The translations under genes were made by a program, and so were the position numbers. A stretch of 64,000 nucleotides of DNA from the IMG/VR virus record IMGVR_UViG_3300037087_000760, positions 1 to 64,000 of that record; one strand, given 5' to 3'. Shown piece by piece: positions 1 through 64,000 of the stretch. The notes beneath the pieces are model-generated. The model worked only from the letters and a program-made list of their open reading frames with translations, was not told the DNA's origin and searched no databases. Each line of letters begins with the position of its first letter. Position 1 is the first letter of the stretch.

Positions 1-1794
1 GTGAAGAAGAATTGGTTTTTTATAATATTATTAGCTATTGCAGCCCTATCATTAGCTGGAACGGCCGCCTACTTTTCTGTATTTGGAATTTCTAAACTTT
101 TTTACGCAGCCGGATTAGGAATTGTTATCTTAGCATCATCATTAGAATTTGCAAAACTTGTTACAGTATCCTATGTTTATCGTTTCTGGAAAACTATTCA
201 AAAAGGATTGAGAGGTTTCTATATTTTTGCTGTTGTTTTTATCATGTTCTTGACATCAATAGGTATATATGGTTTCTTAACGGGGGCTTATCAAAAGTCA
301 GCCAACAAAATCGAAATAAGGGATTCCCAAATAAGAATTGCTGAAAACAAAAAATCTTTGTTTACAAAACAATTAGAGAGAATAAATACGACAATAGAAA
401 GTGATAACAACCGTATCAATGGATTAAATAACGCTCGTGGAGTACAAGAAAGAAGATTGGATACCTTATATAATAGAAGGCAAAGTAGAAAATTTACGGA
501 AAGTTCAATAACTTCTGATAATGAACAATTAAAATTTCTTAATCAGGATATTACGGAAAAAATGAAACAAGCCAGTTCTGTAAATGATTCTATCTCATAT
601 TATGATCAAAAAATTGTAGAATATAAATCATCTGATGTTTCGAATGAAGTTGGACCTTATAAATTCATATCTGATTTAACAGGACTTTCGATGAATAAAG
701 TGGTTAATATAGTAGCCCTTATACTTATATTAGTATTTGACCCGTTAGCCATTGCCCTATTAATTGGGGTAAATCACCTAACCATGATGGGGAAGAAACC
801 AGAAGAAGATAAAGAAGAACATCCAATAAATATTTTTAAGAAACTTTTTAAGAAGAAGAAAAAGATTATCGAACCTGATGTTGACCATGATACTATTAAT
901 TGGAATGAATCTGAACCAGAACCAAAGAAACCTGAAACAATGTACGATTTATTCGTAGAAAAGAAAGAAAAAGAGAAAGAGAAAAAAGTCATAGATAAAC
1001 CAGAAACAATTCAACAGGAAATACCCTTGGAATGGAACAAACAAACTGAAACAAATGATACCGTAAATGATGTTGTAATTGAAAAAAAAACTCTGGTTGG
1101 AAACGATTTATCAGAAGATTCCGAAAATGAAGATGATTATGAAGAAGTTTTTCAAGAATTAACATTTATCGAACCAGGAACACCAGTTTATCATGAGGTT
1201 TTTGGTAAAGGAAAAATTATAGATGTATATCCAAATCAAAGAGTCAAAATAGAATTTGAATCTGGAGAAATTAAGGAATTAAACACTGATTTTGCTAATC
1301 TTAAAGAAGTAAAACGAGTTAAAAAAGATTGGTTTGATAAATACGCAGAGGAATTAAAAAAAAAGAATGATGTAAATCAAAATTTCTATGTTCAGGAAAA
1401 AGTAATAGATGGTAAATCAATATTAGAATTTACCAATGAAGAAGTTGAACACGAAGAAGAAATTCCTTATATTACTATAAAAATAGAACCACCATCTGTT
1501 GAATCCGAGCCAGTTTCACCCGTTGAATCCGTTATTGAAAAAGTCGAATCCGAAACTGTGGTCGAATCCGAACCTGTGGTTGAACAACCTGAGATAGTTA
1601 AATCTGTCCCACCAGTTGAACCAGTAAAACCACCAGTTGTTGAACCTGATTATTATAGTAAAAGTGTGGAACAAAAAGATGATATTCAGAGTGTTACATT
1701 CGGAAATATAATTAGAGTAAACGAACCCGAATCCGATGGATTATCATCACCGAGAATTGGATTTACAAAAGATAGGAAAGGTAGATTACTTTAA
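1..1794 (+). CDS. Membrane-anchored coiled-coil protein with PcrA/UvrD C-terminal Tudor-like domain and acidic Pro/Val/Glu tail
   Basis: N-terminal TM helices, coiled coil, one more TM, then motif GTPVYHEVFGKGKIIDV...VKIEFESGEIKEL; GTG start sits at the window edge. Confidence 0.6.
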   Translation: MKKNWFFIILLAIAALSLAGTAAYFSVFGISKLFYAAGLGIVILASSLEFAKLVTVSYVYRFWKTIQKGLRGFYIFAVVFIMFLTSIGIYGFLTGAYQKSANKIEIRDSQIRIAENKKSLFTKQLERINTTIESDNNRINGLNNARGVQERRLDTLYNRRQSRKFTESSITSDNEQLKFLNQDITEKMKQASSVNDSISYYDQKIVEYKSSDVSNEVGPYKFISDLTGLSMNKVVNIVALILILVFDPLAIALLIGVNHLTMMGKKPEEDKEEHPINIFKKLFKKKKKIIEPDVDHDTINWNESEPEPKKPETMYDLFVEKKEKEKEKKVIDKPETIQQEIPLEWNKQTETNDTVNDVVIEKKTLVGNDLSEDSENEDDYEEVFQELTFIEPGTPVYHEVFGKGKIIDVYPNQRVKIEFESGEIKELNTDFANLKEVKRVKKDWFDKYAEELKKKNDVNQNFYVQEKVIDGKSILEFTNEEVEHEEEIPYITIKIEPPSVESEPVSPVESVIEKVESETVVESEPVVEQPEIVKSVPPVEPVKPPVVEPDYYSKSVEQKDDIQSVTFGNIIRVNEPESDGLSSPRIGFTKDRKGRLL

Positions 1795-3571: not shown

Positions 3572-4450
3572 TTATTTTTCATAATTCGGATTATCATCTG
3601 AAAAATTAGGTGGAATATCTAAATCCTCAGGTGGTGTAGATTTATCATGTTCAGGAACACCTTTACTTCCTTGAAAAGTTGGATCATTAATGTTTGGTAT
3701 TGTTAAATCTCTTAATCTTTTCATATCGTGAATATAAGCTTTGAAATATACCTTTTTCATATTTTCAAATTCAATGTTCTCACCACAATCTAATCTATCT
3801 GTATCCACTTTCCAAGATGGATAATAACTTCTTACTGTTAAAGGGACTTTCATAACTTTTTCTCTAGCTGGACCATTATCAACTGGAAGTGATCTTGGTT
3901 GTTCAATGGTTTTATCATCTGGTAAAAATAAAGCTGAATCTATTTTTAAACCGTAATAATCAATACTGAAAAAGAAATAGTTATACATCATATCCAATAT
4001 CTTCGAACTACACTTATAAACATCTCCCTCAGAAGTTAGATGAATTTCGAAATTGAAATTAAATTGAATCGGAATAGCTTTAACTTTGGTAACAATTCTT
4101 TTTAATTCCTTATCAATTTTTACCGTTTTGGGAATATAAATATTCGGATTGGCAAATTCATCTGAAACAGGTCCCCAACTTTCTATGTTTATAACCCCCC
4201 TCGGCCTTACATCCGTACCCAATTCTACTCTCCTATCAGTTATATCATCTATATAAGTATCTAATAAAAATCTTTCTTCCCCTGTCATCGTTGTGTAAAC
4301 AGGTAGAGTTACACAAACTTTACCTGTTTCAAAACGATATACCCATCTCATATTCCTATTCAATGTTTTGGCCAGAGCCACAATAATCATTCTGAAAAAA
4401 TCATTGTCATAATTATACTCATGCCCTATTTTACTTAAATCCGAACTCAT
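3572..4450 (-). CDS. T4 gp15-like tail terminator / sheath stabiliser
   Basis: YDNDFFRMIIVALAKTL...LPVYTT...ERFL and PIQFNFNFEIHL resemble T4-like gp15; late motif upstream. Confidence 0.65.
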   Translation of the reverse strand: MSSDLSKIGHEYNYDNDFFRMIIVALAKTLNRNMRWVYRFETGKVCVTLPVYTTMTGEERFLLDTYIDDITDRRVELGTDVRPRGVINIESWGPVSDEFANPNIYIPKTVKIDKELKRIVTKVKAIPIQFNFNFEIHLTSEGDVYKCSSKILDMMYNYFFFSIDYYGLKIDSALFLPDDKTIEQPRSLPVDNGPAREKVMKVPLTVRSYYPSWKVDTDRLDCGENIEFENMKKVYFKAYIHDMKRLRDLTIPNINDPTFQGSKGVPEHDKSTPPEDLDIPPNFSDDNPNYEK

Positions 4451-5908: not shown

Positions 5909-6319
5909 ATGAAACATATAATTAATTTTTCGAATTTTGTAATGATTAAAGAGAATCAATCATCTTTAAAGCAAAAACAATTAGAAATAATATTAAAAAC
6001 TAATCCAATGATTGATGATTATCATACTGGAATTAGAGATTTGAAAGATATAAAAACTGCAGAAGAAGCATTTTCAGAATCTATTAAAAATAATGAGAGT
6101 TCTTTTGATGATTTTAGTGTTGAAGATATGAAAGAATCATTAAAGACTAAATTGATTACGGTATATTCATCACATCCAATAAAAAATGGAGTATTCGTTA
6201 CTCCAAGTAAAATGGATGCAAAATCATATGCTGGTAATGGTGAGATTTATCAAAAAAGAGTAAACATATTAGATATCGCTTGGATAGATCAATTTGAAGG
6301 ACAATATGCTAAATTTTAA
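5909..6319 (+). CDS. CTS-like protein with possible ADP-ribosyltransferase-like fold
   Basis: MKHIINFSNF..IKE; ITVYS...FVTPSKMDAKSY...EGQY pattern. Confidence 0.45.
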   Translation: MKHIINFSNFVMIKENQSSLKQKQLEIILKTNPMIDDYHTGIRDLKDIKTAEEAFSESIKNNESSFDDFSVEDMKESLKTKLITVYSSHPIKNGVFVTPSKMDAKSYAGNGEIYQKRVNILDIAWIDQFEGQYAKF

Positions 6320-6957
6320 ATATCTTGATCATTCAATTCGTCCAGTAAAACCTTTTCCCCGAATTTATTTTTTAATCTATCTAACCAATCATCAGTCTTA
6401 ATTTTAACCATCCAAATCTGATGTGATTTATCTTGAGCTTTGGCCTTGCATACTACACCTTCCATCAATCCATAATCATTTCTTTTCACACTATTGATGA
6501 ATTCTTGATTAAGATTACCATGATGAATCAATCTGGGAATTTCCATATGTCCAAAATCTTCTATAAATCTTTTTGGATCTACAAATCCTTTGGTAACAGG
6601 ATTCACATCGAACAACACCAGATTCATCTGATCTTTCGGGTCAATATGTCTACCAGCAAACGAATTTGGGCCATACCATTCACAAAAAACAATAAAATTT
6701 TGAATATTCCTATAATCTTTATTCTTTTTGAATACTTCGGATAGTCCATCTCCATATTTATTCAAAAATAAAGGAATAGCCATTCCAAAATCTGGATTCT
6801 TTGCATCTATCATACATTTACGAGTACCAAATTTATACCATCCTCTTTTCTTTGACCATTCAAAACGTAAATTAGAACCATCCAATTTATCGAAGGCATA
6901 AACCACTTCACCCACTAAACGCTTTCCGTAATAATCTATGTGATCGTATTGTTTCAT
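6316..6957 (-). CDS. RNA ligase (Rnl2-like adenylyltransferase domain)
   Basis: Motif I KLDGSN, CEWYG, FDV, EGVVCK, KIK. Confidence 0.75.
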   Translation of the reverse strand: MKQYDHIDYYGKRLVGEVVYAFDKLDGSNLRFEWSKKRGWYKFGTRKCMIDAKNPDFGMAIPLFLNKYGDGLSEVFKKNKDYRNIQNFIVFCEWYGPNSFAGRHIDPKDQMNLVLFDVNPVTKGFVDPKRFIEDFGHMEIPRLIHHGNLNQEFINSVKRNDYGLMEGVVCKAKAQDKSHQIWMVKIKTDDWLDRLKNKFGEKVLLDELNDQDI

Positions 6958-7232
6958 TTTTCTTTTAATTGTTTTGTTAATTCCTTTCTTCTTTCAATTG
7001 CTTTCTCTTTATCTTCCCATTTTTCAATGAAAGTTTTTTTGAAATAGAATTTGTAATAAATAACATAAAATTTCCCTTCTTTTTCAATAACATATCTCCT
7101 TGTGGTAAATAAAGTCAACTCACTCATTAAGTAATTCCATTTTCCCTCGAAAGCAAAATGATATGTCTTTGTCCCGTATGATATATAGACAGAGAATTTA
7201 CTACCGTTTATATAAAATTTTTTAAAGTTCAT
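6954..7232 (-). CDS. Hypothetical protein
   Basis: Overlaps neighbours in operon-like packing. Confidence 0.55.
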
Positions 7233-9252
7233 TTTCTATTTTTTCATAATGAGAAAAAGTCAAATTGTTTATAGCTCTCCCCTGTGATAATGTTCTAAGT
7301 GTTGTTATAAAACCAAACTTCTCAGCCAAAGGTGATTGAACTTTGAGGATTATAGTCGAATCTGGTAATGTATTAATAGATACTATCGTAGAACGATGTT
7401 TATTAAGTTCACTAATTATATCACTCAAATATTCTTCTGGTGTCGTAATTTCTTCATCCATGATAGGTTCAAGTAAACACGGTTTACCTTTCATATAAGC
7501 CTTCGGAAACGAAATCTTCACACAAGTTTCAAAGGCGTATGGGCTTGAATCCACAACATGAGTAGAACCATCTATGATTGTTACTTTCAAACTTTCGATT
7601 TCGTTACCACCCAATGGACCACTAATCATACATTCTTTAAAAGCCTTTTCGATAGAAGTCATATATTCTCTTGGAATGTTTCCACCTTTAACCTCATTCA
7701 CAAAAATTAAACCCTTTGTATCATCGGATACAGGTTCTATTCTATACTCAATCTCAGCAAACATACCCTTTCCACCAGTTTGTCTTGATAATCTTTCTTT
7801 GTGTGTTACTGGTTGAGTTATTGTTTCTCTATAAGAAACTTTTGGTTGTCCTGTATTACATCCGACATTAAAATCAGTAATCAATCTACTTAAAATCACA
7901 TCCAAATATAATTCGCCCATACCACTAATAATGGTTTGTCCATTTTCATCTATCTTAACAGTAAATGTAGGATCTTCCTCAGTAAGTTTTTGAAGAGCAA
8001 ATCCTAATTTATCACTATCCTTATTTGTTAAGGGTTCAATGGTTATTGAAATAACTGGTTTTGGAACAATCATATTCTCAAAATGGAATGTATCTTTTGT
8101 TTCACAAAGAGTATCACCAGTTCGTAAATCTTTTATTCCAACAATACCACAAATATCACCAGCACCAACAGATTTTACTTCTATTTTCTTATTGGCTTGA
8201 ATGGTAAATAATCTTGAAATTCTTTCTGATTGTCCTGTTCTGGAATTATAAACAACTTGACCAAGTTTAAGCACACCAGAATAAACTCGAATCATAGATA
8301 ATTTTCCAGTATTTTTATCTGTCGAAATTTTAAAAACCAAAGCTGATAATTTTTCATCTTCACTTGGTCTAATTTCAACTTGTTCCGAATCTCTATTGGC
8401 ATAAATAATACCCCTATCAACTGGAGATGGTAAAAAATTCACCACAGCATCAAGTAATGTTTGTACTCCCTTATTTTTCTTAGCAGATCCACACAAAATA
8501 GGAACAATAGAAAAATCTAATGTTAAACTACGAAGATTTTTAATTATTTCTTCATTCGTTATCAATTCAGGTGTTTCCAAATACTTCTCAAAAAAGTCAT
8601 CGTTATGTTCCGAAATAGATTCAATCATTTTAATTCGGAATTTCAATGCCTGATCTAAGTATTCTTCAGGTATTACAGAAACACTATATTCCTGACCTAA
8701 TGTTTCGGAAGCCCATGTAATCAGTTTCATATCTATAAGGTCAATAACACCTTTGAAATTACTTTCACTTCCTACGGGAAGTTGAATCACAACTGGTTTC
8801 GATTTAAGTCTATCTTGAATTTGATGTACTACATTAAAGAAATCAGCTCCAATCCTATCCATCTTGTTTACAAAGGCTATTCTTGGTACTTTATATCTGT
8901 TGGCCTGTCTCCAAACTGTTTCGGATTGAGGTTGTACACCGCCGACTGCACAGAAAACAACAACGGCCCCATCTAATATTCGGAGTGAGCGTTCAACCTC
9001 AATCGTAAAATCAATGTGGCCGGGAGTATCTATAATATTTATCTTATGATCTTTCCAATACGATGTAACAGCAGCTGCCATAATCGTTATACCTCGTTCT
9101 TGTTCCTGAGGCATAAAATCGGTTACTGTATTACCATCGTGAACCTCTCCCATTTTATGATTCTCACCAGTATAATACAATATACGCTCAGTCAATGTGG
9201 TTTTTCCGGCATCGATATGGGCTACTATTCCTATATTTCTGTTAAGATTCAT
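7222..9252 (-). CDS. fusA: Elongation factor G
   Basis: [42 protein letters not shown]; 676 aa. Confidence 0.95.
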
Positions 9253-9399
9253 ATTTAATTTTTATTATATTTTCGAAATTTAATGTCGTTTAAAATGATG
9301 TTTATAAACGACATAATGACCGAAATCAGTCTGTAATGTAGGATATAAACAACAAAAAGTATATGTATAACATATCTTAAATTTTATTTATTTTATTTG

Positions 9400-9474
9400 A
9401 GTCAGAGGAGGGATTCGAACCCACGATTGTACGGTTTTGCAGACCGGTGCTTTTGACCACTCAGCCACCCTGAC
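9400..9474 (-). tRNA. tRNA-Cys(GCA)
   Basis: Full cloverleaf, anticodon loop CT-GCA-AA, T loop TTCGAAT, U73. Confidence 0.9.
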
Positions 9475-9593
9475 GAATTATTCTTCTTTGGATTCCTCTA
9501 ATCTTTTCCTGTCGAATTCTAACCATTCATCCAGTTTTTCATCAGTAAAAGAATTGAGTAATTCTACAAAATCCTCATATAAAGTATCCAAAT

Positions 9594-10214
9594 CTATTCC
9601 TTTTTCCATTTTACATTTAATGACTTATCGAATACTAACAAATATCTATGTTTACGACTTCGAGGTCTCCATTCACCCTCGACATCTTTCACTTTCCCCC
9701 TTGATTGCTTTATATATGTTCCATCTGGTTTTTTAATCCAGAAATCATTTTTGGGTTCTGTTAAACCATAATATTGAAAATTACATGCTTTATATATCGT
9801 ACCTAAATGAAAATCAGCATCAGCATAACTCAATATAACTCTAACTTTCGTATCTTTTCTCAATTGACGAATCGCCCTCGATACAAACCAACTGGTAATA
9901 TTATGTTCTACTTTTTGAATATCTGGATGAACACATAATCTACTCAACTCAAATAAACCCTCTTGATCATTTCTTTCCAATCCTAACATCCCCTTAGAAA
10001 GTTCTGGAACTGGAAAACCAGTGAAAATAATCACACCAACTAATTGTTCATTTTCAAACAGACCGTAATTAAAACCACTTTTAAATCCTCTGGAGATGTC
10101 TTTGAGATAATGAAATTTCAATAATAATTCACCAGCTTGTTCTTTGGTAATTCTACTCACATTGAAATTTTCTTTCATACCCTCATTTATAAACTCCAAA
10201 AATGTTTTTATCAT
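9594..10214 (-). CDS. mom: Mu Mom-like DNA adenine modification protein with CTS-like N-terminus
   Basis: FHYL, GLFENEQLVGVIIF, ELSRL, SWFVSRAIRQL, ILSYAD, HLGTIYKACNF; start MIKTFLEFINE just after late motif at 10220-10229. Confidence 0.8.
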   Translation of the reverse strand: MIKTFLEFINEGMKENFNVSRITKEQAGELLLKFHYLKDISRGFKSGFNYGLFENEQLVGVIIFTGFPVPELSKGMLGLERNDQEGLFELSRLCVHPDIQKVEHNITSWFVSRAIRQLRKDTKVRVILSYADADFHLGTIYKACNFQYYGLTEPKNDFWIKKPDGTYIKQSRGKVKDVEGEWRPRSRKHRYLLVFDKSLNVKWKKE

Positions 10215-10249
10215 GATTGTATATATTAATATACTCAATCATGAATTAG

Positions 10250-10342
10250 AAGCGGGGGTAGGAGTCGAACCCACTATCTAAAGGTTATGAGCCTTTAATG
10301 ATTTATGTTGACGAATCAACAATTCCGTTTCACTCTCCCGCA
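10250..10342 (-). tRNA. tRNA-Met(CAT), initiator-like, with hairpin inserted in D loop
   Basis: AAAGG-CTCATAA-CCTTT arm, T arm intact, 1:72 mismatch; D loop contains TGTTGA-TTCG-TCAACA. Confidence 0.7.
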
Positions 10343-10356
10343 ATGTATTAAAATAG

Positions 10357-10445
10357 TAGCGGATGTAAGATTCGAACTTACGACTTCCTTATGGGAAGTT
10401 TCAGCTTATGAGACTGAGGAGATAGGCCAACTTCTCTAATCCGCG
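10357..10445 (-). tRNA. tRNA-Met(CAT) with long variable arm
   Basis: C1:U72 mismatch, TCAGT-CTCATAA-GCTGA, variable hairpin ACTTCC-CATAA-GGAAGT. Confidence 0.75.
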
Positions 10446-10451
10446 ATGTGT

Positions 10452-10552
10452 GTCCTACTGTTGGTGCGACCAACCTTTCTGGAACTCATTATACCGTAGG
10501 TTAGAGCGACCAACTTTATTAGTTCAATGATATTTCCCTCTGAATTAGTAGG
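10452..10552 (-). ncRNA. Unknown tRNA-sized structured RNA
   Basis: Closed by GTCCTACT/AGTAGGAC; two similar GTTGG-TCGCn-CYAAC hairpins; sits between two tRNAs. Confidence 0.5.
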
Positions 10553-10558
10553 ACTTAG

Positions 10559-10630
<72 letters not shown>

Positions 10631-10635
10631 ATATA

Positions 10636-10884
10636 TTATTTCAATTCATGTCTGCACAATGGACATTCTTTAATTTTTATCAACCAATGAATAGTTCTCA
10701 CTACCGTTTTTTCTGGGTCATCAAAACACACCTTTTCACCATCCCAAATTCCTACGATTGATGTTTTCACAGTTTTACCATTAACTCTTTTTATGTTATG
10801 GTATTGAACTAAATCACCTTTCTTAATATCATCTAATTGTTTACCAATCAGATTTCCGTAATTGTCGTATTTACTTTCTTCCAT
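10636..10884 (-). CDS. Hypothetical protein inside tRNA cluster
   Basis: 82 aa ORF with own TAnnTTTG promoter. Confidence 0.65.
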   Translation of the reverse strand: MEESKYDNYGNLIGKQLDDIKKGDLVQYHNIKRVNGKTVKTSIVGIWDGEKVCFDDPEKTVVRTIHWLIKIKECPLCRHELK

Positions 10885-10888
10885 TTTA

Positions 10889-10920
10889 CAAAGATATAAA
10901 TAAATATTCTAATTAAAAAA
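10889..10920 (-). promoter_or_regulatory. Bacteroidota-type promoter (TATCTTTG with upstream T-run)
   Basis: Matches -7 consensus TAnnTTTG. Confidence 0.7.
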
Positions 10921-10926
10921 TCATTG

Positions 10927-10999
10927 AGATCGGAGAGGGAATCAAACCCCCGTCTCTGAGGTTGCAGCTCAGCACCTATTTACACTCGGCCATCCGACC
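10927..10999 (-). tRNA. tRNA-Cys(GCA)
   Basis: CTGAG-CTGCAAC-CTCAG arm, U73. Confidence 0.8.
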
Positions 11000-11004
11000 A
11001 TTTG

Positions 11005-11077
11005 AGCGATAAGTGGGGGTCAAACCCACGACCTTCAGCTTGGGAAGCTGACACTCTATCAACTGAGCTATTATCGC
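11005..11077 (-). tRNA. tRNA-Gly(CCC)
   Basis: TCAGC-TTCCCAA-GCTGA, U73. Confidence 0.9.
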
Positions 11078-11130
11078 ATCCGTTTGACACATCCTTTGAC
11101 ATCACCCTCTCTCCGTTATATCAAACAGCG

Positions 11131-11202
11131 AGCGAGTAATCAGAATCGAACTGACATCATCGGTATGGTAAGCCGATACACTACACATTGTGCTATACTC
11201 GC
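11131..11202 (-). tRNA. tRNA-Gly(ACC), 31:39 mismatch
   Basis: TCGGC-TTACCAT-ACCGA, Gly-type acceptor, U73. Confidence 0.75.
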
Positions 11203-11277
11203 GAATCAGTACCCGCACTTTCCGCCTTAATTATTCCCTGTTACACTGCGGTTAGGGAGTTGGTTATGATAGACCTG

Positions 11278-11360
11278 AGCGGGAGAAGGGATTCGAACCC
11301 TCACCTGAAGTTTGGAAGACTCCTATGCTAGCTTACGCGACCGTTAAACACCACTCCCGC
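11278..11360 (-). tRNA. tRNA-Gly(TCC) with D-loop insertion
   Basis: GGAGT-CTTCCAA-ACTTC; 19-nt D loop containing GC-GTAA-GC. Confidence 0.8.
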
Positions 11361-11371
11361 GAGTGATTTTG

Positions 11372-11442
11372 AGCAGATAATGAGAATCGAACTCACATCA
11401 AAAGATTGGAAATCTCTTACACTACCATTGTGCTATATCTGC
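11372..11442 (-). tRNA. tRNA-Gly(TCC)
   Basis: AGAGA-TTTCCAA-TCTTT, U73. Confidence 0.9.
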
Positions 11443-11448
11443 GTAAAA

Positions 11449-11553
11449 GGTCAGTATGTCGAATGTATTCGGACTGATTTTCGTTTTGCACATTCCTAAT
11501 CATCTGTCTTAACATCTCAGTTCACCGCCATTGTGCTACCGCGTTTACTGACC
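11449..11553 (-). ncRNA. Unknown tRNA-sized structured RNA
   Basis: Closed by GGTCAGTA/TACTGACC; carries D-arm-like TAGCACAATGG; fills the gap between two tRNAs. Confidence 0.45.
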
Positions 11554-11554
11554 T

Positions 11555-11629
11555 TGGAGCGGGATGCGGGATTTAAACCCGCGACCTGAAGTTTGGTAAA
11601 CTTCCGCTCTATCACTGAGCTAATCCCGC
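11555..11629 (-). tRNA. tRNA-Gly(ACC) with encoded CCA
   Basis: Perfect GAAGT-TTACCAA-ACTTC arm, U73-CCA. Confidence 0.9.
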
Positions 11630-11717
11630 GTGGGAGGCTATCTAAACTCTTTGACCCAATCAGATTTCTCCTGTCATGAGTTAACTTCGCCTTATTAGTT
11701 TTTCGAATGTTTTTTAG

Positions 11718-11789
11718 TAGCCCCGGCGGGAATCGAACCTGCATCCAGAAATTAGAAGTTTCTTGTTCTATCCATTGAACTACGGAGCC
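11718..11789 (-). tRNA. tRNA-Arg(TCT)
   Basis: AGAAA-CTTCTAA-TTTCT, canonical cloverleaf. Confidence 0.9.
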
Positions 11790-11838
11790 ATACTTTATAT
11801 AAACTATTTACCACCATTAAGTTTAATATTAATTATTG

Positions 11839-11916
11839 TAACCCTGAAGGGATTCGAACCCTCATTTTCATCCGTTATGCACAATCGAGTTTAGAAAACT
11901 CAGCCATTACAGGGCT
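11839..11916 (-). tRNA. D-armless tRNA-Arg(TCT)-like RNA with 22-nt variable region
   Basis: Acceptor AGCCCTG/CAGGGTT, TGAGT-TTTCTAA-ACTCG arm and T arm intact; only TAATGGC between acceptor and anticodon arm. Confidence 0.6.
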
Positions 11917-11921
11917 ATTTG

Positions 11922-12003
11922 TACCGATGGAGAGATTCGAACTCTCACTTCCGATGGAAACAAGTTCCTAAAACTTGCGTGTCTACCATTCCACCACACC
12001 GGC
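11922..12003 (-). tRNA. tRNA-Leu(TAG)
   Basis: CAAGT-TTTAGGA-ACTTG, class II variable arm, A73. Confidence 0.9.
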
Positions 12004-12029
12004 TTAAAAAGTTAAATAAGTTGTGATAT

Positions 12030-12124
12030 TGTACACCATACCCAACCCAGAGTCGAACTGGATTAGTTGGGGTCTCGAACCCCGCTTCACACAACCACCT
12101 ACTACCGTTCAGTATTATTCAACC
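12030..12124 (-). ncRNA. tRNA-derived element with two T-arm-like hairpins
   Basis: GGGG-TTCGAGA-CCCC and CCAG-TTCGACT-CTGG plus D-like TACT-GAACGGT-AGTA. Confidence 0.5.
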
Positions 12125-12128
12125 TTAG

Positions 12129-12198
12129 CAGTACAAGCAGGAATCGAACCTACATCCACCCTCTACTGAGGGTACTCTTTCCATTAAGCTACTGTACT
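12129..12198 (-). ncRNA. tRNA-like RNA lacking an anticodon loop (AGTA tetraloop)
   Basis: Acceptor, D and T arms canonical; CCCTC-AGTA-GAGGG in place of anticodon arm; G73. Confidence 0.75.
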
Positions 12199-12262
12199 TA
12201 CACATCAATTTTATTCTAGCTTATTATGATGTGATTTACACTTTTGATGTAAATATCTTTTA

Positions 12263-12330
12263 GTACTCTAAAAGGATTCGAACCTATACTCCTCGCTTAC
12301 GCGAGTGTGCTACCATTACACCATAAAGTC
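12263..12330 (-). ncRNA. tRNA-like RNA lacking an anticodon loop (GTAA GNRA tetraloop)
   Basis: GTGT-AATGGTA-GCAC D arm, CTCGC-GTAA-GCGAG, TTCGAAT T loop. Confidence 0.7.
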
Positions 12331-12430
12331 AACTTTCGTCATTGACACTGACATATCATTTCGGAAAGAACACATATTTTACTCCTTTCTGATTGTCAGA
12401 TCTTACTCGTTTCAAATTCCAGTGTTTTTG

Positions 12431-12503
12431 CAGGCAGTACGGGAGTTGAACCCGCTCCGAACGCCGTGACAGGGCGACATCTTAACCGTTTGACCTACTG
12501 CCT
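12431..12503 (-). tRNA. tRNA-Asp(GTC)
   Basis: CT-GTC-AC loop, G73. Confidence 0.85.
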
Positions 12504-12521
12504 ATGTAGGGGAACATTCTG

Positions 12522-12598
12522 CGGGCCCAGTGGGATTCAAACCCACCTGTTATTCCTGATCGACAGTCAGGTAGACACATCCAGCATCTCCTGAGCCC
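12522..12598 (-). tRNA. tRNA-Asp(GTC), divergent
   Basis: CCTGA-CTGTCGA-TCAGG, 8-nt variable loop, T loop TTTGAAT, G73. Confidence 0.75.
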
Positions 12599-12609
12599 AT
12601 TCATTATTG

Positions 12610-12709
12610 CGGTAGGAGTTGGGATCGAACCAACATATAAAGCATTCATCCTATCAGACTACTTCTGATGTCCATCGGTGGCACCCTATGAACTTTATGC
12701 TATCCTACC
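12610..12709 (-). ncRNA. tRNA-like RNA with intact acceptor/T arm and expanded centre lacking a canonical anticodon arm
   Basis: GGTAGGA/TCCTACC-G, GTTGG-TTCGATC-CCAAC, internal ATCAGA-AGTAG-TCTGAT hairpin. Confidence 0.65.
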
Positions 12710-12729
12710 ATTTATTTTTAGTATCCAAT

Positions 12730-12762
12730 ATGTCAAAGAACATATTATAATGTCAAAGAAAC
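12730..12762 (-). promoter_or_regulatory. Tandem boxA-like antitermination elements
   Basis: Two copies of TTCTTTGACAT on the tRNA-coding strand, 20 nt apart. Confidence 0.5.
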
Positions 12763-12770
12763 ATTATAAT

Positions 12771-12848
12771 TGGCGGTACATTACGGTTTCGAACCGTTGA
12801 TTTTACATGGGTGACAACCATGTTCCTCACCAAGAGGCCTAATGAACC
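12771..12848 (-). tRNA. tRNA-Asp(GTC) with encoded CCA
   Basis: CATGG-TTGTCAC-CCATG, G73-CCA. Confidence 0.8.
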
Positions 12849-13205: not shown

Positions 13206-13243
13206 AAACAAAAAAACCCAACCGTTATTATCCGATTGGGTTC
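13206..13243 (-). terminator. Attenuator terminator upstream of RNA operon
   Basis: AACCCAATCG-GATAATAA-CGGTTGGGTT followed by T-run. Confidence 0.85.
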
Positions 13244-15780: not shown

Positions 15781-16019
15781 AATGTTTTTATTAATTGTTC
15801 AGCCTCTGCAATATGAATAAACTCTGTGTGATATAAAGAAATAGGAATAGTATCCACTTTCTGAGTTCCGATTATTTGACACAAATGTATAAATTTAGGA
15901 TCAGAATAACTTTGTTCTATTATAGTAATCTCAGGAAATTTTTCACGAAGTTTTTTGATAATCGCCTCAATTTCTTCTGATGTATATACCCTCGGTTTTA
16001 TCATGATACTATTTATCAA
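15777..16019 (-). CDS. Hypothetical protein
   Basis: Operon-like overlap. Confidence 0.55.
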   Translation of the reverse strand: MINSIMIKPRVYTSEEIEAIIKKLREKFPEITIIEQSYSDPKFIHLCQIIGTQKVDTIPISLYHTEFIHIAEAEQLIKTL

Positions 16020-16743
16020 TTATTAAAATTTGTGACTCAATCATTGTTCCACTCTCTTTGAAAGTACCAGAGGGTACTTTTTGAATTTTAGCACGAACTT
16101 TTTTCAACCAATTTCTGAATTCGGTTTCCTTTTTGTTGTTTGAGGTTTCCCAATGTCTTGAAGCGATAGTAACCAATCTACCACCATCTTTCAAACAATC
16201 ATACATCTTGTAAATGTGGTCTATATCCTGATTTTTCGAGAACGGTGGATTGGCGATAATTTTATCGAAGTGTGTATCACACTCTGTTAAGAAGTCATTT
16301 CCAAGTAATCGGAAACCAACGATTTTATTCAAAAAAGTTTGGTTCACATCCATTAATTCGTATCCCCAAACAGTTCTCGCTCCCCAAGTTTCACGATGGA
16401 TAGCCTTAACAATGGCACCCTGTCCAGCACTTGGTTCTAATACTTCATCATCAATTTGAATTTCAGCCAATTCAACCAGAATATCACTTAATCCCTCTGG
16501 TGTTTCAAAAAATTGAAATTCCTTTTTAAGATTACGACTTTCTCCGTTTGCTATCTGATAAAGTAATTCGGTGGGATCAGTAGGAAAAACAAACCCAAAA
16601 ACCTTTCCACCTTTCCATTTTCCACCAATCAGTTCAAGTGCCTTTGCAACTTCCTGATAAAGCTTTCTTTCCAGTTGTCCATAGGGTAGTTTTACAACAA
16701 AACCCTCAACGGTACATCCTTTTAATACATCTTCCTTAGTCAT
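16009..16743 (-). CDS. SAM-dependent amino (N6A/N4C-type) methyltransferase
   Basis: FFETP, LEPSAGQG, IIANPPF; start moved to MTKEDVLK downstream of promoter. Confidence 0.85.
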   Translation of the reverse strand: MTKEDVLKGCTVEGFVVKLPYGQLERKLYQEVAKALELIGGKWKGGKVFGFVFPTDPTELLYQIANGESRNLKKEFQFFETPEGLSDILVELAEIQIDDEVLEPSAGQGAIVKAIHRETWGARTVWGYELMDVNQTFLNKIVGFRLLGNDFLTECDTHFDKIIANPPFSKNQDIDHIYKMYDCLKDGGRLVTIASRHWETSNNKKETEFRNWLKKVRAKIQKVPSGTFKESGTMIESQILIIDK

Positions 16744-16760
16744 TGTTTCAGTTTGAACTA

Positions 16761-16802
16761 CAAATTTACAACAATAAGCTGAAATAAAAAAATTAATATA
16801 TA
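16761..16802. promoter_or_regulatory. Back-to-back host-type promoter (TAAATTTG, minus) and late promoter (TTAATATATA, plus)
   Basis: Both motifs match their recurrent consensus. Confidence 0.65.
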
Positions 16803-16807
16803 AATTC

Positions 16808-17581
16808 ATGGTCATTCAGAGATTTAACGATATTGTTTTTGAGAAAAAGTTGGATTTTTTCTTATATTCACTTGATGAAGGGTTATCTTTTGAAGATTTT
16901 AAAGATAAGGTGAAAAGATATTTACCGAATATAAAGACAAAAGAACAAGCCAAAAATTTCTTATTGGGTGTAATTAAAAAACTGAAGCCTAAAAAAGTTT
17001 TTATATTTTTTTTAATAAAAGCCGTATTACTTCTTAACTTATTGACAATCAGTGAAACATTTGATTTATTTAAAGGGACACAATATTATAAAGTTGTTAC
17101 TGAATATAGGGAATTCGTAAAGCCAAAAAATGAAAAAATCAAAGAATTTATAGCTAAATTATTCCAAAGAGAAGCTGGTGGAATAGTAAATGCAACAAAA
17201 ACAGATTCCACAGGAACAAATACTTATATCGGGGCTTTTCAATTTAGTAAATCAGCTCTGAAAGAACTTGGGTTGGGACATATCACGATTGATAAATTTA
17301 AAAATAATCCAAATATTTTTCCTTACGAGGAACAAGAAAAAGCATTAATGAAATATATGGATCTGAATGAATATTATTTAAGAAGATATATGAGTTACAT
17401 TGGAAAAGAGATAAATGGAGTTGAAATAACAAAATCGGGTATATTGGCAGCGGCTCACTTGGTTGGTCAGGGAAAAGTAAAAAAATTTTTGAGTAGTAAC
17501 GGTAAAAAAGATCCCAGAGATGGTAACGGTGTAAGATGTTCTACTTATATGAAAGAATTCGGTGGATATGATATTGAATAA
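16808..17581 (+). CDS. Lysozyme-like / lytic transglycosylase domain protein
   Basis: QREAGG, GAFQF, QEKAL, SGILAAAHLVGQG, YMKEFGGY; CTS-like start. Confidence 0.7.
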   Translation: MVIQRFNDIVFEKKLDFFLYSLDEGLSFEDFKDKVKRYLPNIKTKEQAKNFLLGVIKKLKPKKVFIFFLIKAVLLLNLLTISETFDLFKGTQYYKVVTEYREFVKPKNEKIKEFIAKLFQREAGGIVNATKTDSTGTNTYIGAFQFSKSALKELGLGHITIDKFKNNPNIFPYEEQEKALMKYMDLNEYYLRRYMSYIGKEINGVEITKSGILAAAHLVGQGKVKKFLSSNGKKDPRDGNGVRCSTYMKEFGGYDIE

Positions 17582-27537: not shown

Positions 27538-28524
27538 TTATTTATGTAAGTCCCTGTATTTGTTGTTATAAGAAATACAAACGTCAAGGCAGTTTCCTCT
27601 ACAAATTGGATCTTCAAAACAGTTATGTTCATCGAACCATTTCTTTCTATCTGATCTCATATTTTCAGAAACCTCTCCAATTGGTTGACCATATTCTCTC
27701 ATATAAATAACACAAGGAAAATGGAAATTTCCGGCTATAACAGAATCATCCAAAACCAATGCACATTTCGATGAATCAGTTTCAGACATGCCTCTTACAT
27801 TGATTCCGTTCCTGAAATGATTTACCCTGTATTTAAGGATCGGGTACTTATTCAATAATTCTTCAGGTACTTGACCAAGAGCTTCAATCGGTTCATTCCA
27901 TTGGGCTGCCGAAATAATACGAATATCGGATACCCCCCTTGAATCAGCAAACTTGATTGTATCAATAGTTTTCTGAACATTATCGGGTGTTAAAACAACA
28001 CCAACTGTAACATAAGTGAGTTTGGAAATATGTTTGATATTTTCAACGACTTTTTCAAATGAACCAATAACCCCACCAGACATTTTTTCTCCATCATCAG
28101 CACAACAGGCATCCAATGAAATTGAGAAGTCATTAACTCCAGCCTCAATCAATTCATCGTATAGTGTAGTTCTGTTAGAACCATTGGTAGAAATGGCAAT
28201 TCTTTTAATACCCTTTGACTTAGCGTACTTTACGATTTCAATAATATCGGGATGTAATGTAGGTTCACCACCAGAAAAACGAATGTTCTCCAGAGGTAAG
28301 GGTTCACACCACAAATCGATGTTTCTTTTAATTTCTTCCAGAGAAAGCATTTTGAATTTACGATCACCGTAGATCCAAGCTTTCAAACCACGACAGTAAG
28401 GACATTTGAAATTACAATATTCAGTGATAATCATCTCACATCTTTTCATTTGAGATGAATCAGACGAATTTTTGGCTCTTTCGTCAGAAAGGGAATAGAA
28501 ACCTATATTCTTTAAATCAGTCAT
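27538..28524 (-). CDS. Radical SAM protein
   Basis: CNFKCPYC, FSGGEPTL, ISTNGS, C-terminal Cys cluster. Confidence 0.9.
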   Translation of the reverse strand: MTDLKNIGFYSLSDERAKNSSDSSQMKRCEMIITEYCNFKCPYCRGLKAWIYGDRKFKMLSLEEIKRNIDLWCEPLPLENIRFSGGEPTLHPDIIEIVKYAKSKGIKRIAISTNGSNRTTLYDELIEAGVNDFSISLDACCADDGEKMSGGVIGSFEKVVENIKHISKLTYVTVGVVLTPDNVQKTIDTIKFADSRGVSDIRIISAAQWNEPIEALGQVPEELLNKYPILKYRVNHFRNGINVRGMSETDSSKCALVLDDSVIAGNFHFPCVIYMREYGQPIGEVSENMRSDRKKWFDEHNCFEDPICRGNCLDVCISYNNKYRDLHK

Positions 28525-62649: not shown

Positions 62650-63453
62650 TTACTTATAATTAGGGATAATCTTGGTTAAATATTCCCATTCCTGAGAAAA
62701 TATTGGTGGATCAACAACAACCCATTTACCATCCACTTTTACGATAGCACGGCCACGCTTTAAACCAGTTGGTATTTTATCCCAATTCTGACCTTTCTGA
62801 AAAATCATTTCTTGTTGTTGTTTGGAATTTTTTCCATTTAATTGAGATCGTGAAGAATGTGGATATAAGGATTGTGCCACCGATGAAATACTATTTCTGG
62901 TGGCATCTCCCTGACGCCAAACCAGATAGTTGATAACATCAGTCGGGGATGGAATGGTGAATACTCTGGAATCAAAACGAGCACCTTTATTTTTTTTAAT
63001 GAGTTTTATGACATCAGATAGTTTAACTAATCCCAATAATTCATCAAATTCCAATGAATTCATTGATGCCGCTAATAACCAAATATAAAATTCTTTATTG
63101 AATGTTTCAGTTACAATGGAAGCGGAATTACTACAAATCTTCTGAACAATTCCATCCCACCAAGGCATTGTTTTAATATCATCAAAATCGGTCATGATGA
63201 TAGAAATTTCATCCGATTGAACAAATCCAATTTTACAACCCTGAGCTTCTTCACAAAGAGCAATAGCGGATTGATTCATCATATTCACAAAATTTTCATC
63301 AAATGGTCTTTTGAACCTCTTAGTGAATGTGTGGAAAGCACGACCATCTACACGGATAAGAGTATATGTTCTCTGAGGGAGTTTACCACGAGTGACTTCC
63401 TCATAATTTTTCATTCTTTCCCCTAAAGAATCTTTCTCTGGTTTCTTACTCAT
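62650..63453 (-). CDS. thg1: tRNA(His) guanylyltransferase Thg1-like protein
   Basis: IRVDGRAFHTFT, QSDEIS, FDSR, WRQGDATRNSI; TATTTTTG promoter at 63479-63486. Confidence 0.92.
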   Translation of the reverse strand: MSKKPEKDSLGERMKNYEEVTRGKLPQRTYTLIRVDGRAFHTFTKRFKRPFDENFVNMMNQSAIALCEEAQGCKIGFVQSDEISIIMTDFDDIKTMPWWDGIVQKICSNSASIVTETFNKEFYIWLLAASMNSLEFDELLGLVKLSDVIKLIKKNKGARFDSRVFTIPSPTDVINYLVWRQGDATRNSISSVAQSLYPHSSRSQLNGKNSKQQQEMIFQKGQNWDKIPTGLKRGRAIVKVDGKWVVVDPPIFSQEWEYLTKIIPNYK

Positions 63454-63512: not shown

Positions 63513-64000
63513 TTAAGCCAATAATTCTATTTTTCCTTTCAAAATATCTTTCCAACGACACGACTTTCCAGTAATGTGATCAGTTACAACATCTTCTCTT
63601 ATTCTATAAGTCCTTCTTTTTTGACCTCCCCTACTTCCATTTCCAATTTGGTCATTACGAAAATTCTTATTCTTCTCGTAGTTTTTCTTATCTTCGATTA
63701 CTTTTAGTTTCTCATATAATCTCTGATAAGCTATTTCTTCATTTTTTGTTTGGTCTCTTGTGTCTTGACATTTAATTTGAATTCCAGTTGGAATATGAGT
63801 TAATTGAACACAAGAGGCCACTTTATTCACATTCTGACCACCAGCTCCAGAACTACGGATATATTTCTTAGTTATCTCATTATAATTCAACTGAAGGTCT
63901 GTATTAACTTCTGGGTTCATAATTGCCACCGTTACGAAGCTGGTTTGAACCCTACCATTCTTTTCGGTAGGTGGTATCCTCACAAAACAGTGTGATCCAC
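63513..64000 (-). CDS. prfA: Class I peptide release factor, RF1-like (5' end outside window)
   Basis: PPT, SSGAGGQNVNK, QIGNG, RTY, VTDH; frame stays open to the window edge (GSHCFVRIPPTE). Confidence 0.85.
   Translation of the reverse strand, partial: GSHCFVRIPPTEKNGRVQTSFVTVAIMNPEVNTDLQLNYNEITKKYIRSSGAGGQNVNKVASCVQLTHIPTGIQIKCQDTRDQTKNEEIAYQRLYEKLKVIEDKKNYEKNKNFRNDQIGNGSRGGQKRRTYRIREDVVTDHITGKSCRWKDILKGKIELLA

What the first reader, a model, noticed from the sequence alone, without database searches (positions are those of the whole stretch)
7222..9252. Full-length phage-encoded EF-G directly downstream of the tRNA operon
Seen: all GTPase motifs are intact over 676 aa, in a phage context on the tRNA strand. 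Known: EF-G is uncommon in phages, and some bacteria have recycling-specialised EF-G paralogs. Inferred: it may replace a host factor targeted by defence, or act in recycling with the RF1-like and ArfA-like proteins.
Basis: partly seen in the sequence, partly recalled or inferred. Interest (0 to 1): 0.6.

Follow-up and report, generated by a model that had tools for sequence, protein, structure and literature searches.

The report
Huge-phage EF-G lacking its terminal helix
A giant bacteriophage from peat carries its own intact copy of the ribosome translocation factor EF-G, a kind of gene already reported in huge phages in 2020, and this phage lineage's version has lost one small helix and changed a few residues that are invariant in cellular EF-G.

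Summary
Window 7222-9252 (-) is an intact 676-aa ORF that passes NCBI's EF-G equivalog model. It has all five EF-G domains, all G1-G5 motifs, the catalytic His and the two domain-IV tip residues. It starts 146 nt downstream of a same-strand array of 14 tRNA genes.

The contig is a real phage, not a host chimera. It is a 211-kb fragment related to the 735-kb huge phage of Al-Shayeb et al. 2020. Both flanks are phage genes, and contigs from other peat studies bridge both junctions.

Phage EF-G is already known. That paper lists EF-G in huge phages, and its 735-kb genome holds a 77 %-identical orthologue.

New here:
- The gene belongs to an old phage lineage that is sister to Bacteroidota EF-G and under purifying selection.
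- The lineage has lost the C-terminal helix of domain IV.
- The window's clade also carries Tyr where 182/182 cellular EF-Gs have His (S. aureus H457, a fusidic-acid-resistance site).
- EF-G is the only translational GTPase in five complete huge-phage genomes, and none encodes RRF.

Most likely it is a working translocase that supplements or replaces host EF-G. The recycling-module idea is not supported. No ArfA or RRF was found, and the "RF1-like" gene is a truncated half, 54 kb away.

The parts
7222..9252 (-). EF-G coding sequence (676 aa, P0001), canonical fusA type without the C-terminal helix of domain IV
   Evidence: ORF and translation; TIGR00484 855 bits over the cut-off, five Pfam domains; PDB EF-G at E 4e-217; fold search returns only EF-G, best TM 0.85; tail loss
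9253..9398 (-). 146-nt A/T-rich leader between tRNA-Cys and the EF-G start. It holds a perfect 10-bp inverted repeat (9283-9314) and has no Shine-Dalgarno-like run before the ATG.
   Evidence: Sequence read directly; RNA fold -24 kcal/mol, z = -2.55 against shuffles; function not tested
9399..12848 (-). Array of 14 tRNA genes (Cys, Met x2, Cys, Gly x4, Arg, Leu, one with an odd anticodon loop, Asp x3) upstream of EF-G on the same strand; Rfam adds a further tRNA at 12263-12330
   Evidence: ARAGORN; Rfam. tRNA arrays also precede EF-G in the relatives L002, L006 and L007
9594..10238 (-). Mom-like ORF (214 aa) lying inside the tRNA array
   Evidence: Pfam PF25680 at 4.6e-29; phrog_1384
6954..7232 (-). 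Small ORF (92 aa) overlapping the EF-G stop by 11 nt. Its homologue in relative L007 lies directly upstream of EF-G instead.
   Evidence: ORF list; 55 % identity to L007:9600-9866; no family hit
6316..6957 (-). RNA-ligase-like gene (213 aa, nucleotidyltransferase domain), a conserved downstream neighbour of EF-G
   Evidence: PF09414 at 9e-9, phrog_548. The orthologue directly follows EF-G, with overlapping stop and start, in L006 and L007 at 52-78 % identity
13214..13243 (-). Terminator-like hairpin (11 pairs plus a T-run) just upstream of the tRNA array; possible upstream boundary of the transcription unit
   Evidence: Consensus scan only
6187..6205 (-). Terminator-like hairpin about 110 nt past the ligase stop; possible downstream boundary. 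It lies inside the convergent ORF 5909-6319, so it is weak.
   Evidence: Consensus scan only

Best explanation
The gene encodes a functional, canonical-type elongation factor G that belongs to the phage itself. The phage is a huge, Mahaphage-type phage from peat whose host is probably a member of the Bacteroidota. An ancestor of this phage lineage captured the gene once, from a Bacteroidota-like host, and it has since been inherited within the lineage. Shown: it has been kept under purifying selection with every catalytic element intact. Inferred: it is probably transcribed with the upstream tRNA array and the downstream RNA-ligase-like gene as part of a phage translation module. Inferred from the family: during infection it binds host 70S ribosomes at the GTPase centre, hydrolyses GTP and drives tRNA-mRNA translocation. 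With host RRF it could also split ribosomes. This would top up or replace host EF-G so that a very large phage proteome can be made, for instance in starved hosts that have turned canonical EF-G down. The lineage has lost the C-terminal helix of domain IV. The window's clade has also re-made the switch-II/domain-III pocket (V->I80, H->Y449, D->S455). I infer that these changes alter its release kinetics or make it insensitive to ligands that act on cellular EF-G at those sites.
For: Family and intactness: TIGR00484 over its cut-off, five domains, alignment to solved EF-G over 670 residues, EF-G-only fold hits. G1-G5, His79, Phe82, Gln491 and His565 are invariant in all 15 distinct clade members. 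Selection and composition: pairwise dN/dS is 0.09-0.15, and GC3 of 0.17-0.21 matches the 30.6 % GC genome. Phage ownership: a 77 %-identical orthologue sits in the curated 735-kb phage. About 18 ORFs of that phage's EF-G region have homologues across G000. The left-flank genes hit the same phage at 69 % and 54 %. Contigs from other peat studies bridge both junctions, with only one base difference in one run. Lineage: under LG+C20 the clade groups with the 634- and 642-kb phages and L015 (99*), and that group is sister to Bacteroidota EF-G (99*). No cellular genome of about 185,000 species exceeds 55 % identity. Module: in L002, L006 and L007 the order is L7/L12 - tRNA array - small ORFs - EF-G, and the RNA-ligase-like gene follows EF-G directly in L006 and L007 (not found in L002); G000 has a true L12 (TIGR00855 over its cut-off). 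EF-G is the only trGTPase in five complete huge phages. Prior report and hypothesis: Al-Shayeb 2020. Bacteroides lowers fusA expression under carbon limitation (PMC6989115).
Against: No expression data exist: no RNA run holds the stretch. No activity was measured. The protein lacks a structural element, the terminal helix of domain IV, that 180 of 182 cellular EF-Gs have; the two exceptions look like fragments. It also carries changes at positions invariant in cells, one of which (H457Y) costs fitness in S. aureus, so normal function cannot be assumed. The starvation rationale is an analogy from gut Bacteroides, not from this host. The host itself is not identified. The operon boundaries rest on consensus scans only.
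Confidence: 0.7

Rival explanations
1. It is an inhibitor-insensitive replacement. The phage, or a host defence, disables cellular EF-G through the C-terminal helix or the switch-II/domain-III pocket. The phage's own EF-G, lacking the helix and carrying Tyr449, Ser455 and Ile80, escapes and keeps translation going for the phage.
For: Changes sit at positions that are 182/182 conserved in cells: His->Tyr at S. aureus 457, Asp->Ser at 463, Val->Ile next to the catalytic His. H457Y is a top fusidic-acid-resistance change that contacts the drug. The missing helix is part of the docking site of FusB-type EF-G-binding proteins. Tails shorter than any complete cellular tail occur in about five separate phage EF-G lineages. 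EF-G is the only trGTPase these phages carry.
Against: No candidate inhibitor was found, and there is no FusB-type protein in the record. The 634- and 642-kb phages share the tail loss but keep His at 449, so the traits are not one package. The changes could be neutral, compensatory or tuned to ribosome kinetics. The literature on EF-G sites is dominated by fusidic-acid work, which inflates the apparent coincidence.
Confidence: 0.15
2. It is a recycling-specialised EF-G. It works mainly in ribosome splitting and rescue together with the phage's RF1-like and ArfA-like proteins, in the manner of mitochondrial EF-G2 or P. aeruginosa EF-G1A.
For: EF-G takes part in recycling in all bacteria. Very similar paralogues can divide the two roles (PMC3832671, listed). 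A release-factor-like gene lies in the same window.
Against: There is no RRF in this record or in any of five complete EF-G-bearing huge phages. There is no ArfA. The RF1-like ORF is only positions 181-333 of RF1 and lies 54 kb away, not in the module. The translocation-critical tip residues Gln491 and His565 are invariant in the clade. Scores for EF-G2-type models are far below their cut-offs.
Confidence: 0.1
3. It is not a phage gene: a host fusA on a chimeric assembly, or host DNA at the edge of a prophage call. The record is flagged 'provirus' and the gene lies 7 kb from its end.
For: IMG/VR labels the record 'provirus'. Several 'phage' database records with EF-G are evidently host DNA, for example L011, which sits next to Helicobacter.
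Against: Genes on both sides match huge phages best. Composition matches the phage. Orthologues occur in a curated circular 735-kb phage and in 89- and 104-kb phage contigs with the same neighbours. Independent runs bridge the junctions. No cellular genome has a close copy.
Confidence: 0.02

Closest known systems
EF-G of the 735-kb huge phage LR756501/LR756503 and other Mahaphage genomes (Al-Shayeb et al. 2020, Nature 578:425)
   Same: It is 77 % identical over the full length, lies in the same clade, has the same missing C-terminal helix and the same Tyr at position 449, and is preceded by a tRNA array. That paper lists 'elongation factors G, Tu and Ts, rpL7/12' in huge phages.
   Different: The local gene order differs. 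In the 735-kb phage L7/L12 lies 2.8 kb upstream of EF-G, whereas here it lies 147 kb away. The paper reports presence only. I found no description there of the lineage, the tail loss, the pocket changes or the neighbours.
Canonical bacterial EF-G (FusA; e.g. T. thermophilus 1DAR/4V5F, E. coli b3340, Bacteroidota fusA)
   Same: Five-domain architecture, all GTPase motifs, catalytic His, domain-IV tip Gln and His. Identity is 50-57 %, and the protein is over the TIGR00484 cut-off.
   Different: It lacks the C-terminal helix of domain IV and the short G-domain insertion of Bacteroidota. It differs at 20 positions that are at least 95 % conserved in bacteria. It is not in an rpsL-rpsG-fusA-tufA operon but behind a phage tRNA array.
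Bacteroides EF-G2 (fusA2) and other EF-G2-type paralogues (T. thermophilus EF-G2 1WDT, mitochondrial EF-G2)
   Same: Each is a second EF-G-family factor available to the same ribosomes, used under particular conditions.
   Different: The phage protein scores 438 bits against the Bacteroidota EFG2 model (cut-off 1000) and 314 bits against T. thermophilus EF-G2, compared with 725 for EF-G. It is not a member of those subfamilies.
Ribosomal protection proteins Tet(M)/Tet(O)/Tet(W), often carried on streptococcal phages
   Same: They are EF-G-like trGTPases found in phage records.
   Different: Identity is only 27-29 %. The tet_protect model scores 402 bits against a cut-off of 775.
S. aureus EF-G fusA-class mutant H457Y
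   Same: Tyr at the homologous position, which is 449 here, 457 in S. aureus and 465 in E. coli.
   Different: Here the Tyr is the natural, conserved state of a whole clade on a background only about 46 % identical. Resistance is an inference and was not measured.

Membership tests
Canonical EF-G (FusA, TIGR00484) | Score over the curated equivalog cut-off | tested here: met
   855.1 bits against a cut-off of 659.4, profile positions 10-678 of 691 (858 bits)
Canonical EF-G (FusA, TIGR00484) | Five-domain architecture (G with G' insert, II, III, IV, V) | tested here: met
   Pfam domains are contiguous over residues 4-675. The AF2 model has mean pLDDT 75. The top 50 PDB fold hits are all EF-G, best TM 0.85.
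Canonical EF-G (FusA, TIGR00484) | G1-G5 nucleotide-binding motifs and catalytic His of switch II | tested here: met
   [18 protein letters not shown] (His79 = E. coli His92), NKMD and GSAKKNKG are present and invariant in the clade
Canonical EF-G (FusA, TIGR00484) | Domain-IV tip residues that contact the decoding centre (E. coli Gln508/His584 in this alignment) | tested here: met
   Gln491 and His565 are present in all clade members. Loop I is [11 protein letters not shown], close to the Bacteroidota KQTGGRGKFAD.
Canonical EF-G (FusA, TIGR00484) | C-terminal helix that completes domain IV (S. aureus 675-693) | tested here: not met
   Only 3-9 residues follow the conserved HY motif, against 14-26 in 180 of 182 cellular EF-Gs. 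The role of the helix is taken from PMC3352095.
Canonical EF-G (FusA, TIGR00484) | Ribosome-dependent GTPase and translocation activity | not testable with these tools
   This needs biochemistry. Only conservation and dN/dS of 0.09-0.15 speak for activity.
Huge-phage (Mahaphage-type) EF-G lineage | Groups with the EF-Gs of curated huge phages to the exclusion of cellular EF-G | tested here: met
   The 14-row clade includes LR756501 (99-100*). With LR745206, LR756502 and L015 it is one side of a branch at 99* under both LG+G4 and LG+C20.
Huge-phage (Mahaphage-type) EF-G lineage | Encoded on a phage genome among phage genes | tested here: met
Bacteroidota EF-G2 (NF058620) and EF-G2-like (NF009377) | Score over the curated cut-off | tested here: not met
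   438.5 against 1000 and 401.4 against 890
Tetracycline ribosomal protection proteins (NF012153) | Score over the curated cut-off | tested here: not met
   402.6 against 775
Recycling module (EF-G with RRF, ArfA or ArfB) | Co-encoded RRF or ArfA | tested here: not met
   PF01765 is absent from G000 and from five complete huge phages. PF03889 is absent.

The most novel reading that the evidence does not exclude
Phage EF-Gs are escape versions of the translocase. Loss or shortening of the domain-IV terminal helix appears in about five separate phage lineages but in no complete cellular EF-G in my set. In this clade the fusidic-acid pocket is also re-made (Tyr449, Ser455, Ile80). These changes could make the phage factor blind to a still unknown protein or small molecule, of phage or host origin, that shuts down cellular EF-G during infection. 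Under that reading, translation elongation becomes phage-controlled.
Probability: 0.12. Interest if true: 0.8.

Novelty: new member of a known kind. Interest (0 to 1): 0.4.

Why it matters
Phage-encoded EF-G has so far only been listed in gene inventories, and I found no paper testing what it does. This copy shows that the gene is not a recent host pick-up. It is an old phage lineage gene kept under selection beside tRNAs, an RNA-ligase-like gene and, in relatives, ribosomal protein L7/L12. EF-G is also the only translational GTPase these giant phages bother to carry. The lineage is a natural experiment on EF-G. It does without the terminal helix of domain IV, and the window's clade carries, as its normal state, a residue that in staphylococci gives fusidic-acid resistance at a fitness cost. 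If the protein is active, it offers a compact EF-G for studying how domains III to V control release from the ribosome. It would also make the question of why a virus takes over elongation directly testable.

Tried and rejected
(1) Complex prediction of EF-G residues 1-290 with the C-terminal domain of the phage L7/L12: score 0.22, under the mark of 0.34, so no verdict. It is not evidence either way.

(2) A single-protein scan of IMG/VR found no relative. A scan with the clade alignment was needed.

(3) 'Relatives' cannot be drawn for a virus record.

(4) A 110-row tree with the mixture model did not finish in two runs. I used 64 rows under LG+G4 and 38 rows under LG+C20 instead. In the 64-row set I kept every fourth Bacteroidota row and at most six rows per other phylum. 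Duplicate and partial loci (L008, L010, L014, L021, L026, L029, L031, L032, L118) were left out.

(5) With a Tet-like outgroup and LG+G4 the clade fell at the base of the tree. I treat that as long-branch attraction, because the better model places it as sister to Bacteroidota and the AU test did not reject that placement (p = 0.27).

(6) The G' subdomain is not unusually diverged, so there is no sequence sign of special co-adaptation to the phage L12.

(7) ArfA, RRF and FusB-type proteins are absent.

(8) Stop-codon recoding: there is no suppressor tRNA and coding density is high under table 11. No other genetic code was used.

(9) Expression: none of the listed holders is an RNA run.

(10) Sigma-70-type promoter hits were not clearly above shuffles, at 42 against 32.4 +/- 5.9, and Bacteroidota promoters differ from that consensus, so no promoter is claimed.

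(11) The large representative search (search of protein representatives) was not used, because the family was never in doubt.
Full report
THE OBSERVATION

Window 7222-9252 on the minus strand is an uninterrupted 676-codon ORF that starts with ATG.
- It scores 855 bits against NCBI's EF-G equivalog TIGR00484, whose cut-off is 659.
- Pfam finds the GTP-binding domain, domain 2, domain III, domain IV and the C-terminal domain in order over residues 4-675.
- It aligns to T. thermophilus EF-G over residues 5-674 at E 4e-217.
- An AlphaFold model (mean pLDDT 75) finds only EF-G structures among its 50 best PDB matches, with TM up to 0.85.
- Models for EF-G2, Bacteroidota EFG2, Tet protection proteins, RF3, LepA and BipA all score far below their cut-offs.
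- The motifs [22 protein letters not shown] and GSAKKNKG are present, as are the catalytic His79 (E. coli His92), Phe82, and the domain-IV tip residues Gln491 and His565. All are invariant in the 15 distinct members of its clade.
- Fourteen tRNA genes lie at 9399-12848 on the same strand. The last one ends 146 nt before the EF-G start codon.

IS IT REALLY A PHAGE GENE?

The window is the first 64 kb of a 210,983-bp IMG/VR virus record. The record is flagged 'provirus' and estimated 71 % complete. Because the gene lies 7 kb from the record's end, I tested for chimerism in five ways.

1. Content. The record has 67 tRNA genes in five clusters, 30.6 % GC and dense coding under the standard code.
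2. Relatives. The best phage match of EF-G is a 77 %-identical gene in the curated 735,411-bp phage LR756501. About 18 ORFs from the 42 kb around that gene have homologues spread over 100-195 kb of this record.
3. Flanks. The two tested genes to the left of EF-G (window 1-1794 and 3572-4450) have their best matches in the same 735-kb phage, at 69 % and 54 %, and in other huge phages. To the right lie the tRNA array and a Mom-like gene with phage family hits.
4. Composition. The gene's GC3 is 0.21, like its orthologues and unlike Bacteroidota housekeeping genes.
5. Independent assemblies. The stretch is held by peat metagenomes from 12 studies. In four runs not marked as a possible source, contigs tile it with one base difference in one run. 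Single contigs bridge both the ligase/ORF92/EF-G junction and the EF-G/tRNA-Cys junction.

No cellular genome among about 185,000 species has a copy above 55 % identity. The chimera reading is rejected.

WHAT IS ALREADY KNOWN

Al-Shayeb et al. 2020 describe the 735-kb genome and its 'Mahaphage' clade, with predicted Bacteroidetes hosts. They state that huge phages encode 'elongation factors G, Tu and Ts, rpL7/12', and propose that these maintain translation efficiency during infection. PHROGs also holds a 'translation elongation factor' family that this protein matches. So a phage EF-G is a known kind of thing, and this gene's orthologue has been public since 2020. I found no paper that studies such a protein further.

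LINEAGE

The word-index protein search gives about 15 clusters at 72-83 % identity, all 667-696 aa and mostly from long unnamed metagenome contigs. It then drops to at most 57 % for Bacteroidales/Bacteroidota EF-G of 700-704 aa.

In trees the window's protein sits in a 14-row clade with the 735-kb phage (99-100*). That clade groups with the EF-Gs of the 634-kb and 642-kb huge phages and IMG/VR contig L015, at 99* under both LG+G4 and the site-heterogeneous LG+C20 model. Under the better model the whole group is sister to Bacteroidota EF-G (99*). This agrees with the predicted host phylum, and the AU test had not rejected it under the simpler model (p = 0.27).

Other phage EF-Gs are separate acquisitions:
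- The 636-kb phage's copy lies inside Bacteroidota, next to Marinoscillum.
- The 484-kb phage's copy lies next to a Rhodothermales genome.
- Eight IMG/VR contigs (L017-L025) form a strongly supported clade of their own (100*); L016 joins it only under the simpler model.
- L011 sits beside Helicobacter and may be host DNA.

Pairwise dN/dS within the window's clade is 0.09-0.15, with dS saturated. The picture is one old capture, long vertical descent and steady purifying selection.

HOW THIS EF-G DIFFERS FROM CELLULAR EF-G

First, the tail. After the conserved HY motif near the end of domain V, cellular EF-Gs have 14-26 further residues in 180 of 182 cases. One exception (L055) is cut by a contig end and the other (P0074) comes from a 3.4-kb contig, so both look like fragments. 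The window's clade has 3-9 residues, and the 634-kb phage, the 642-kb phage and L015 have 3-4. Those residues form the C-terminal helix, which is structurally part of domain IV, touches domain V, and forms part of the docking site of FusB (PMC3352095). Tails shorter than any complete cellular tail (4-13 residues) also occur in the separately acquired phage lineages L017-L025, L119, L013 and L027. That suggests a repeated trend in phages.

Second, invariant positions. Twenty positions that are at least 95 % conserved in bacteria are fixed differently in the clade. Some are 182/182 conserved in my cellular set:
- Val->Ile80, next to the catalytic His.
- His->Tyr449, which is Tyr in 14 of 15 distinct clade members and Gln in one.
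- Asp->Ser455.

Position 449 is S. aureus 457. H457Y is among the highest-level single fusidic-acid-resistance changes, sits on the drug-facing side of domain III, and carries a fitness cost (PMC12493156). The sequence shows a resistance-type residue as the natural state. Whether this protein is actually insensitive is an inference and was not measured.

Third, divergence is otherwise even across domains. The G' subdomain, which meets L7/L12, is not singled out. Loop I of domain IV resembles the Bacteroidota version, so its differences from E. coli are inherited, not phage-specific.

NEIGHBOURHOOD

In the two longest relatives (89- and 104-kb contigs) EF-G is followed directly by an RNA-ligase-like gene, with overlapping stop and start. 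It is preceded, on one strand, by small ORFs, a tRNA array, a ribosomal protein L7/L12 homologue, a cold-shock-domain gene and, in one of them, an aminoacyl-tRNA synthetase. The 735-kb phage has L12 - tRNA array - small ORF - EF-G.

In the window the same ligase is present at 6316-6957 (78 % identical to L007's). A 92-aa ORF sits between it and EF-G, and its homologue in L007 lies upstream of EF-G instead. The L12 homologue, a true L7/L12 by TIGR00855, has moved to 156 kb, beside another tRNA array.

Terminator-like hairpins at 13214-13243 and 6187-6205 bracket the minus-strand block tRNA array - EF-G - ORF92 - ligase. These are consensus hits only, and the second lies inside a convergent ORF. 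The 146-nt leader has a perfect 10-bp inverted repeat and folds better than shuffles, with z = -2.55.

WHAT THE PHAGES DO NOT CARRY

In this record and in all five complete huge-phage genomes examined (484-735 kb), EF-G is the only member of the translational GTPase family. None of them has RRF. L12-like hits occur in the three genomes with the tail-less EF-G, strong in one and weak in two, and in neither of the other two. There is no ArfA. The only RF-1-domain gene, at 63513-63983, matches positions 181-333 of RF1. It keeps a PxT-like PPT and the GGQ motif but lacks the N-terminal half.

HOW IT MOST LIKELY WORKS

Shown: it is an intact, conserved, phage-owned EF-G of canonical type in a translation-gene neighbourhood.

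Inferred from the family: it binds the host ribosome's GTPase centre, hydrolyses GTP and drives translocation. With host RRF it could also split ribosomes.

Inferred from context: it supplements or replaces host EF-G while a very large phage genome is expressed. One concrete rationale is that Bacteroides lowers canonical fusA expression under carbon limitation and switches on EF-G2 (PMC6989115). A phage that infects starved Bacteroidota in peat would gain from bringing a fast translocase. I put 0.7 on 'active translocase that supplements or replaces host EF-G'. The starvation rationale is only one possibility within that.

The escape or insensitivity reading gets 0.15, recycling specialisation 0.1 and contamination 0.02.

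VERDICT

This is a new member of a known kind, with interest 0.4. The finding as stated is real but already reported in outline. I did not find the lineage's missing helix, its resistance-type pocket residue, the conserved tRNA/ligase/L12 neighbourhood or EF-G's status as sole trGTPase described anywhere, and they give concrete experiments. The drug test I propose is limited to a reconstituted in-vitro system.

Noticed in passing
window 63513-63983 (-); open frame to G000 64040: Half-size release factor. It matches RF1 positions 181-333 of 347, keeps a PxT-like 'PPT' and the GGQ motif, but lacks domain 1 and the N-terminal half of the codon-reading domain. No N-terminal piece was seen in the 3 kb upstream.
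   Followed up: partly
G000 156045-156422 (+), outside the window (L009:1330-1704): The phage encodes a true ribosomal protein L7/L12 (TIGR00855, 93.9 bits against 84.4) next to a tRNA array. In the relatives L002, L006 and L007 this gene lies 3-5 kb upstream of EF-G on the same strand, so the two have been separated in this genome.
   Followed up: partly
five complete huge-phage records (LR756501, LR745206, LR756502, LR756504, LR756508): EF-G is the only GTP_EFTU-family protein in each of them, with no EF-Tu, IF2, RF3 or LepA, and none has RRF.
   Followed up: yes
loci L017-L025, L119, L013, L027: Independently acquired phage EF-Gs also have C-terminal tails of 4-13 residues, shorter than any complete cellular tail in the set (14-26). 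This looks like a repeated trend in phages.
   Followed up: partly
loci L015 and L027: Two phage EF-Gs look degenerate at the tip of domain IV. L015 has an insertion in loop I and has lost the loop-II His, and L027 has lost both tip motifs.
   Followed up: no
window 12128-12198, 12263-12330, 11130-11202, 11555-11629, 10356-10445; G000 90792-90874 and others: Odd tRNAs. One has a 2-nt anticodon call and one a 4-nt call (gcca). Rfam calls an extra tRNA that ARAGORN misses. There are two tRNA-Gly with anticodon ACC. About ten class-I tRNAs are 81-92 nt long, which could mean inserts or introns.
   Followed up: no
window 9594-10238 (-): A Mom-like DNA-modification gene (PF25680, 4.6e-29) sits inside the tRNA array.
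   Followed up: no
window 6954-7232 (-) and L007:9600-9866: A 92-aa ORF of unknown function lies downstream of EF-G here but directly upstream of EF-G in L007, at 55 % identity. It is a small gene that stays with EF-G but changes sides.
   Followed up: partly
window 62650-63453 (-): A Thg1-like tRNA-His guanylyltransferase (phrog_4717, 2.6e-71) lies next to the truncated release factor.
   Followed up: no
window 10425-10621: Summed contig depth jumps from about 5 to 290-470 over one tRNA-Met gene in all four peat runs. This tRNA sequence is therefore shared with abundant other organisms in the samples.
   Followed up: no
L007:2935-4152 and L007:13161-14048: A TnpB/Cas12f-like IS605 OrfB gene and a LAGLIDADG endonuclease gene lie within the translation module of the relative.
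   Followed up: no
window 16009-16815 (-) and 27538-28524 (-): A DNA-methyltransferase-like ORF that matches segments of giant phage proteins, and a radical-SAM enzyme.
   Followed up: no
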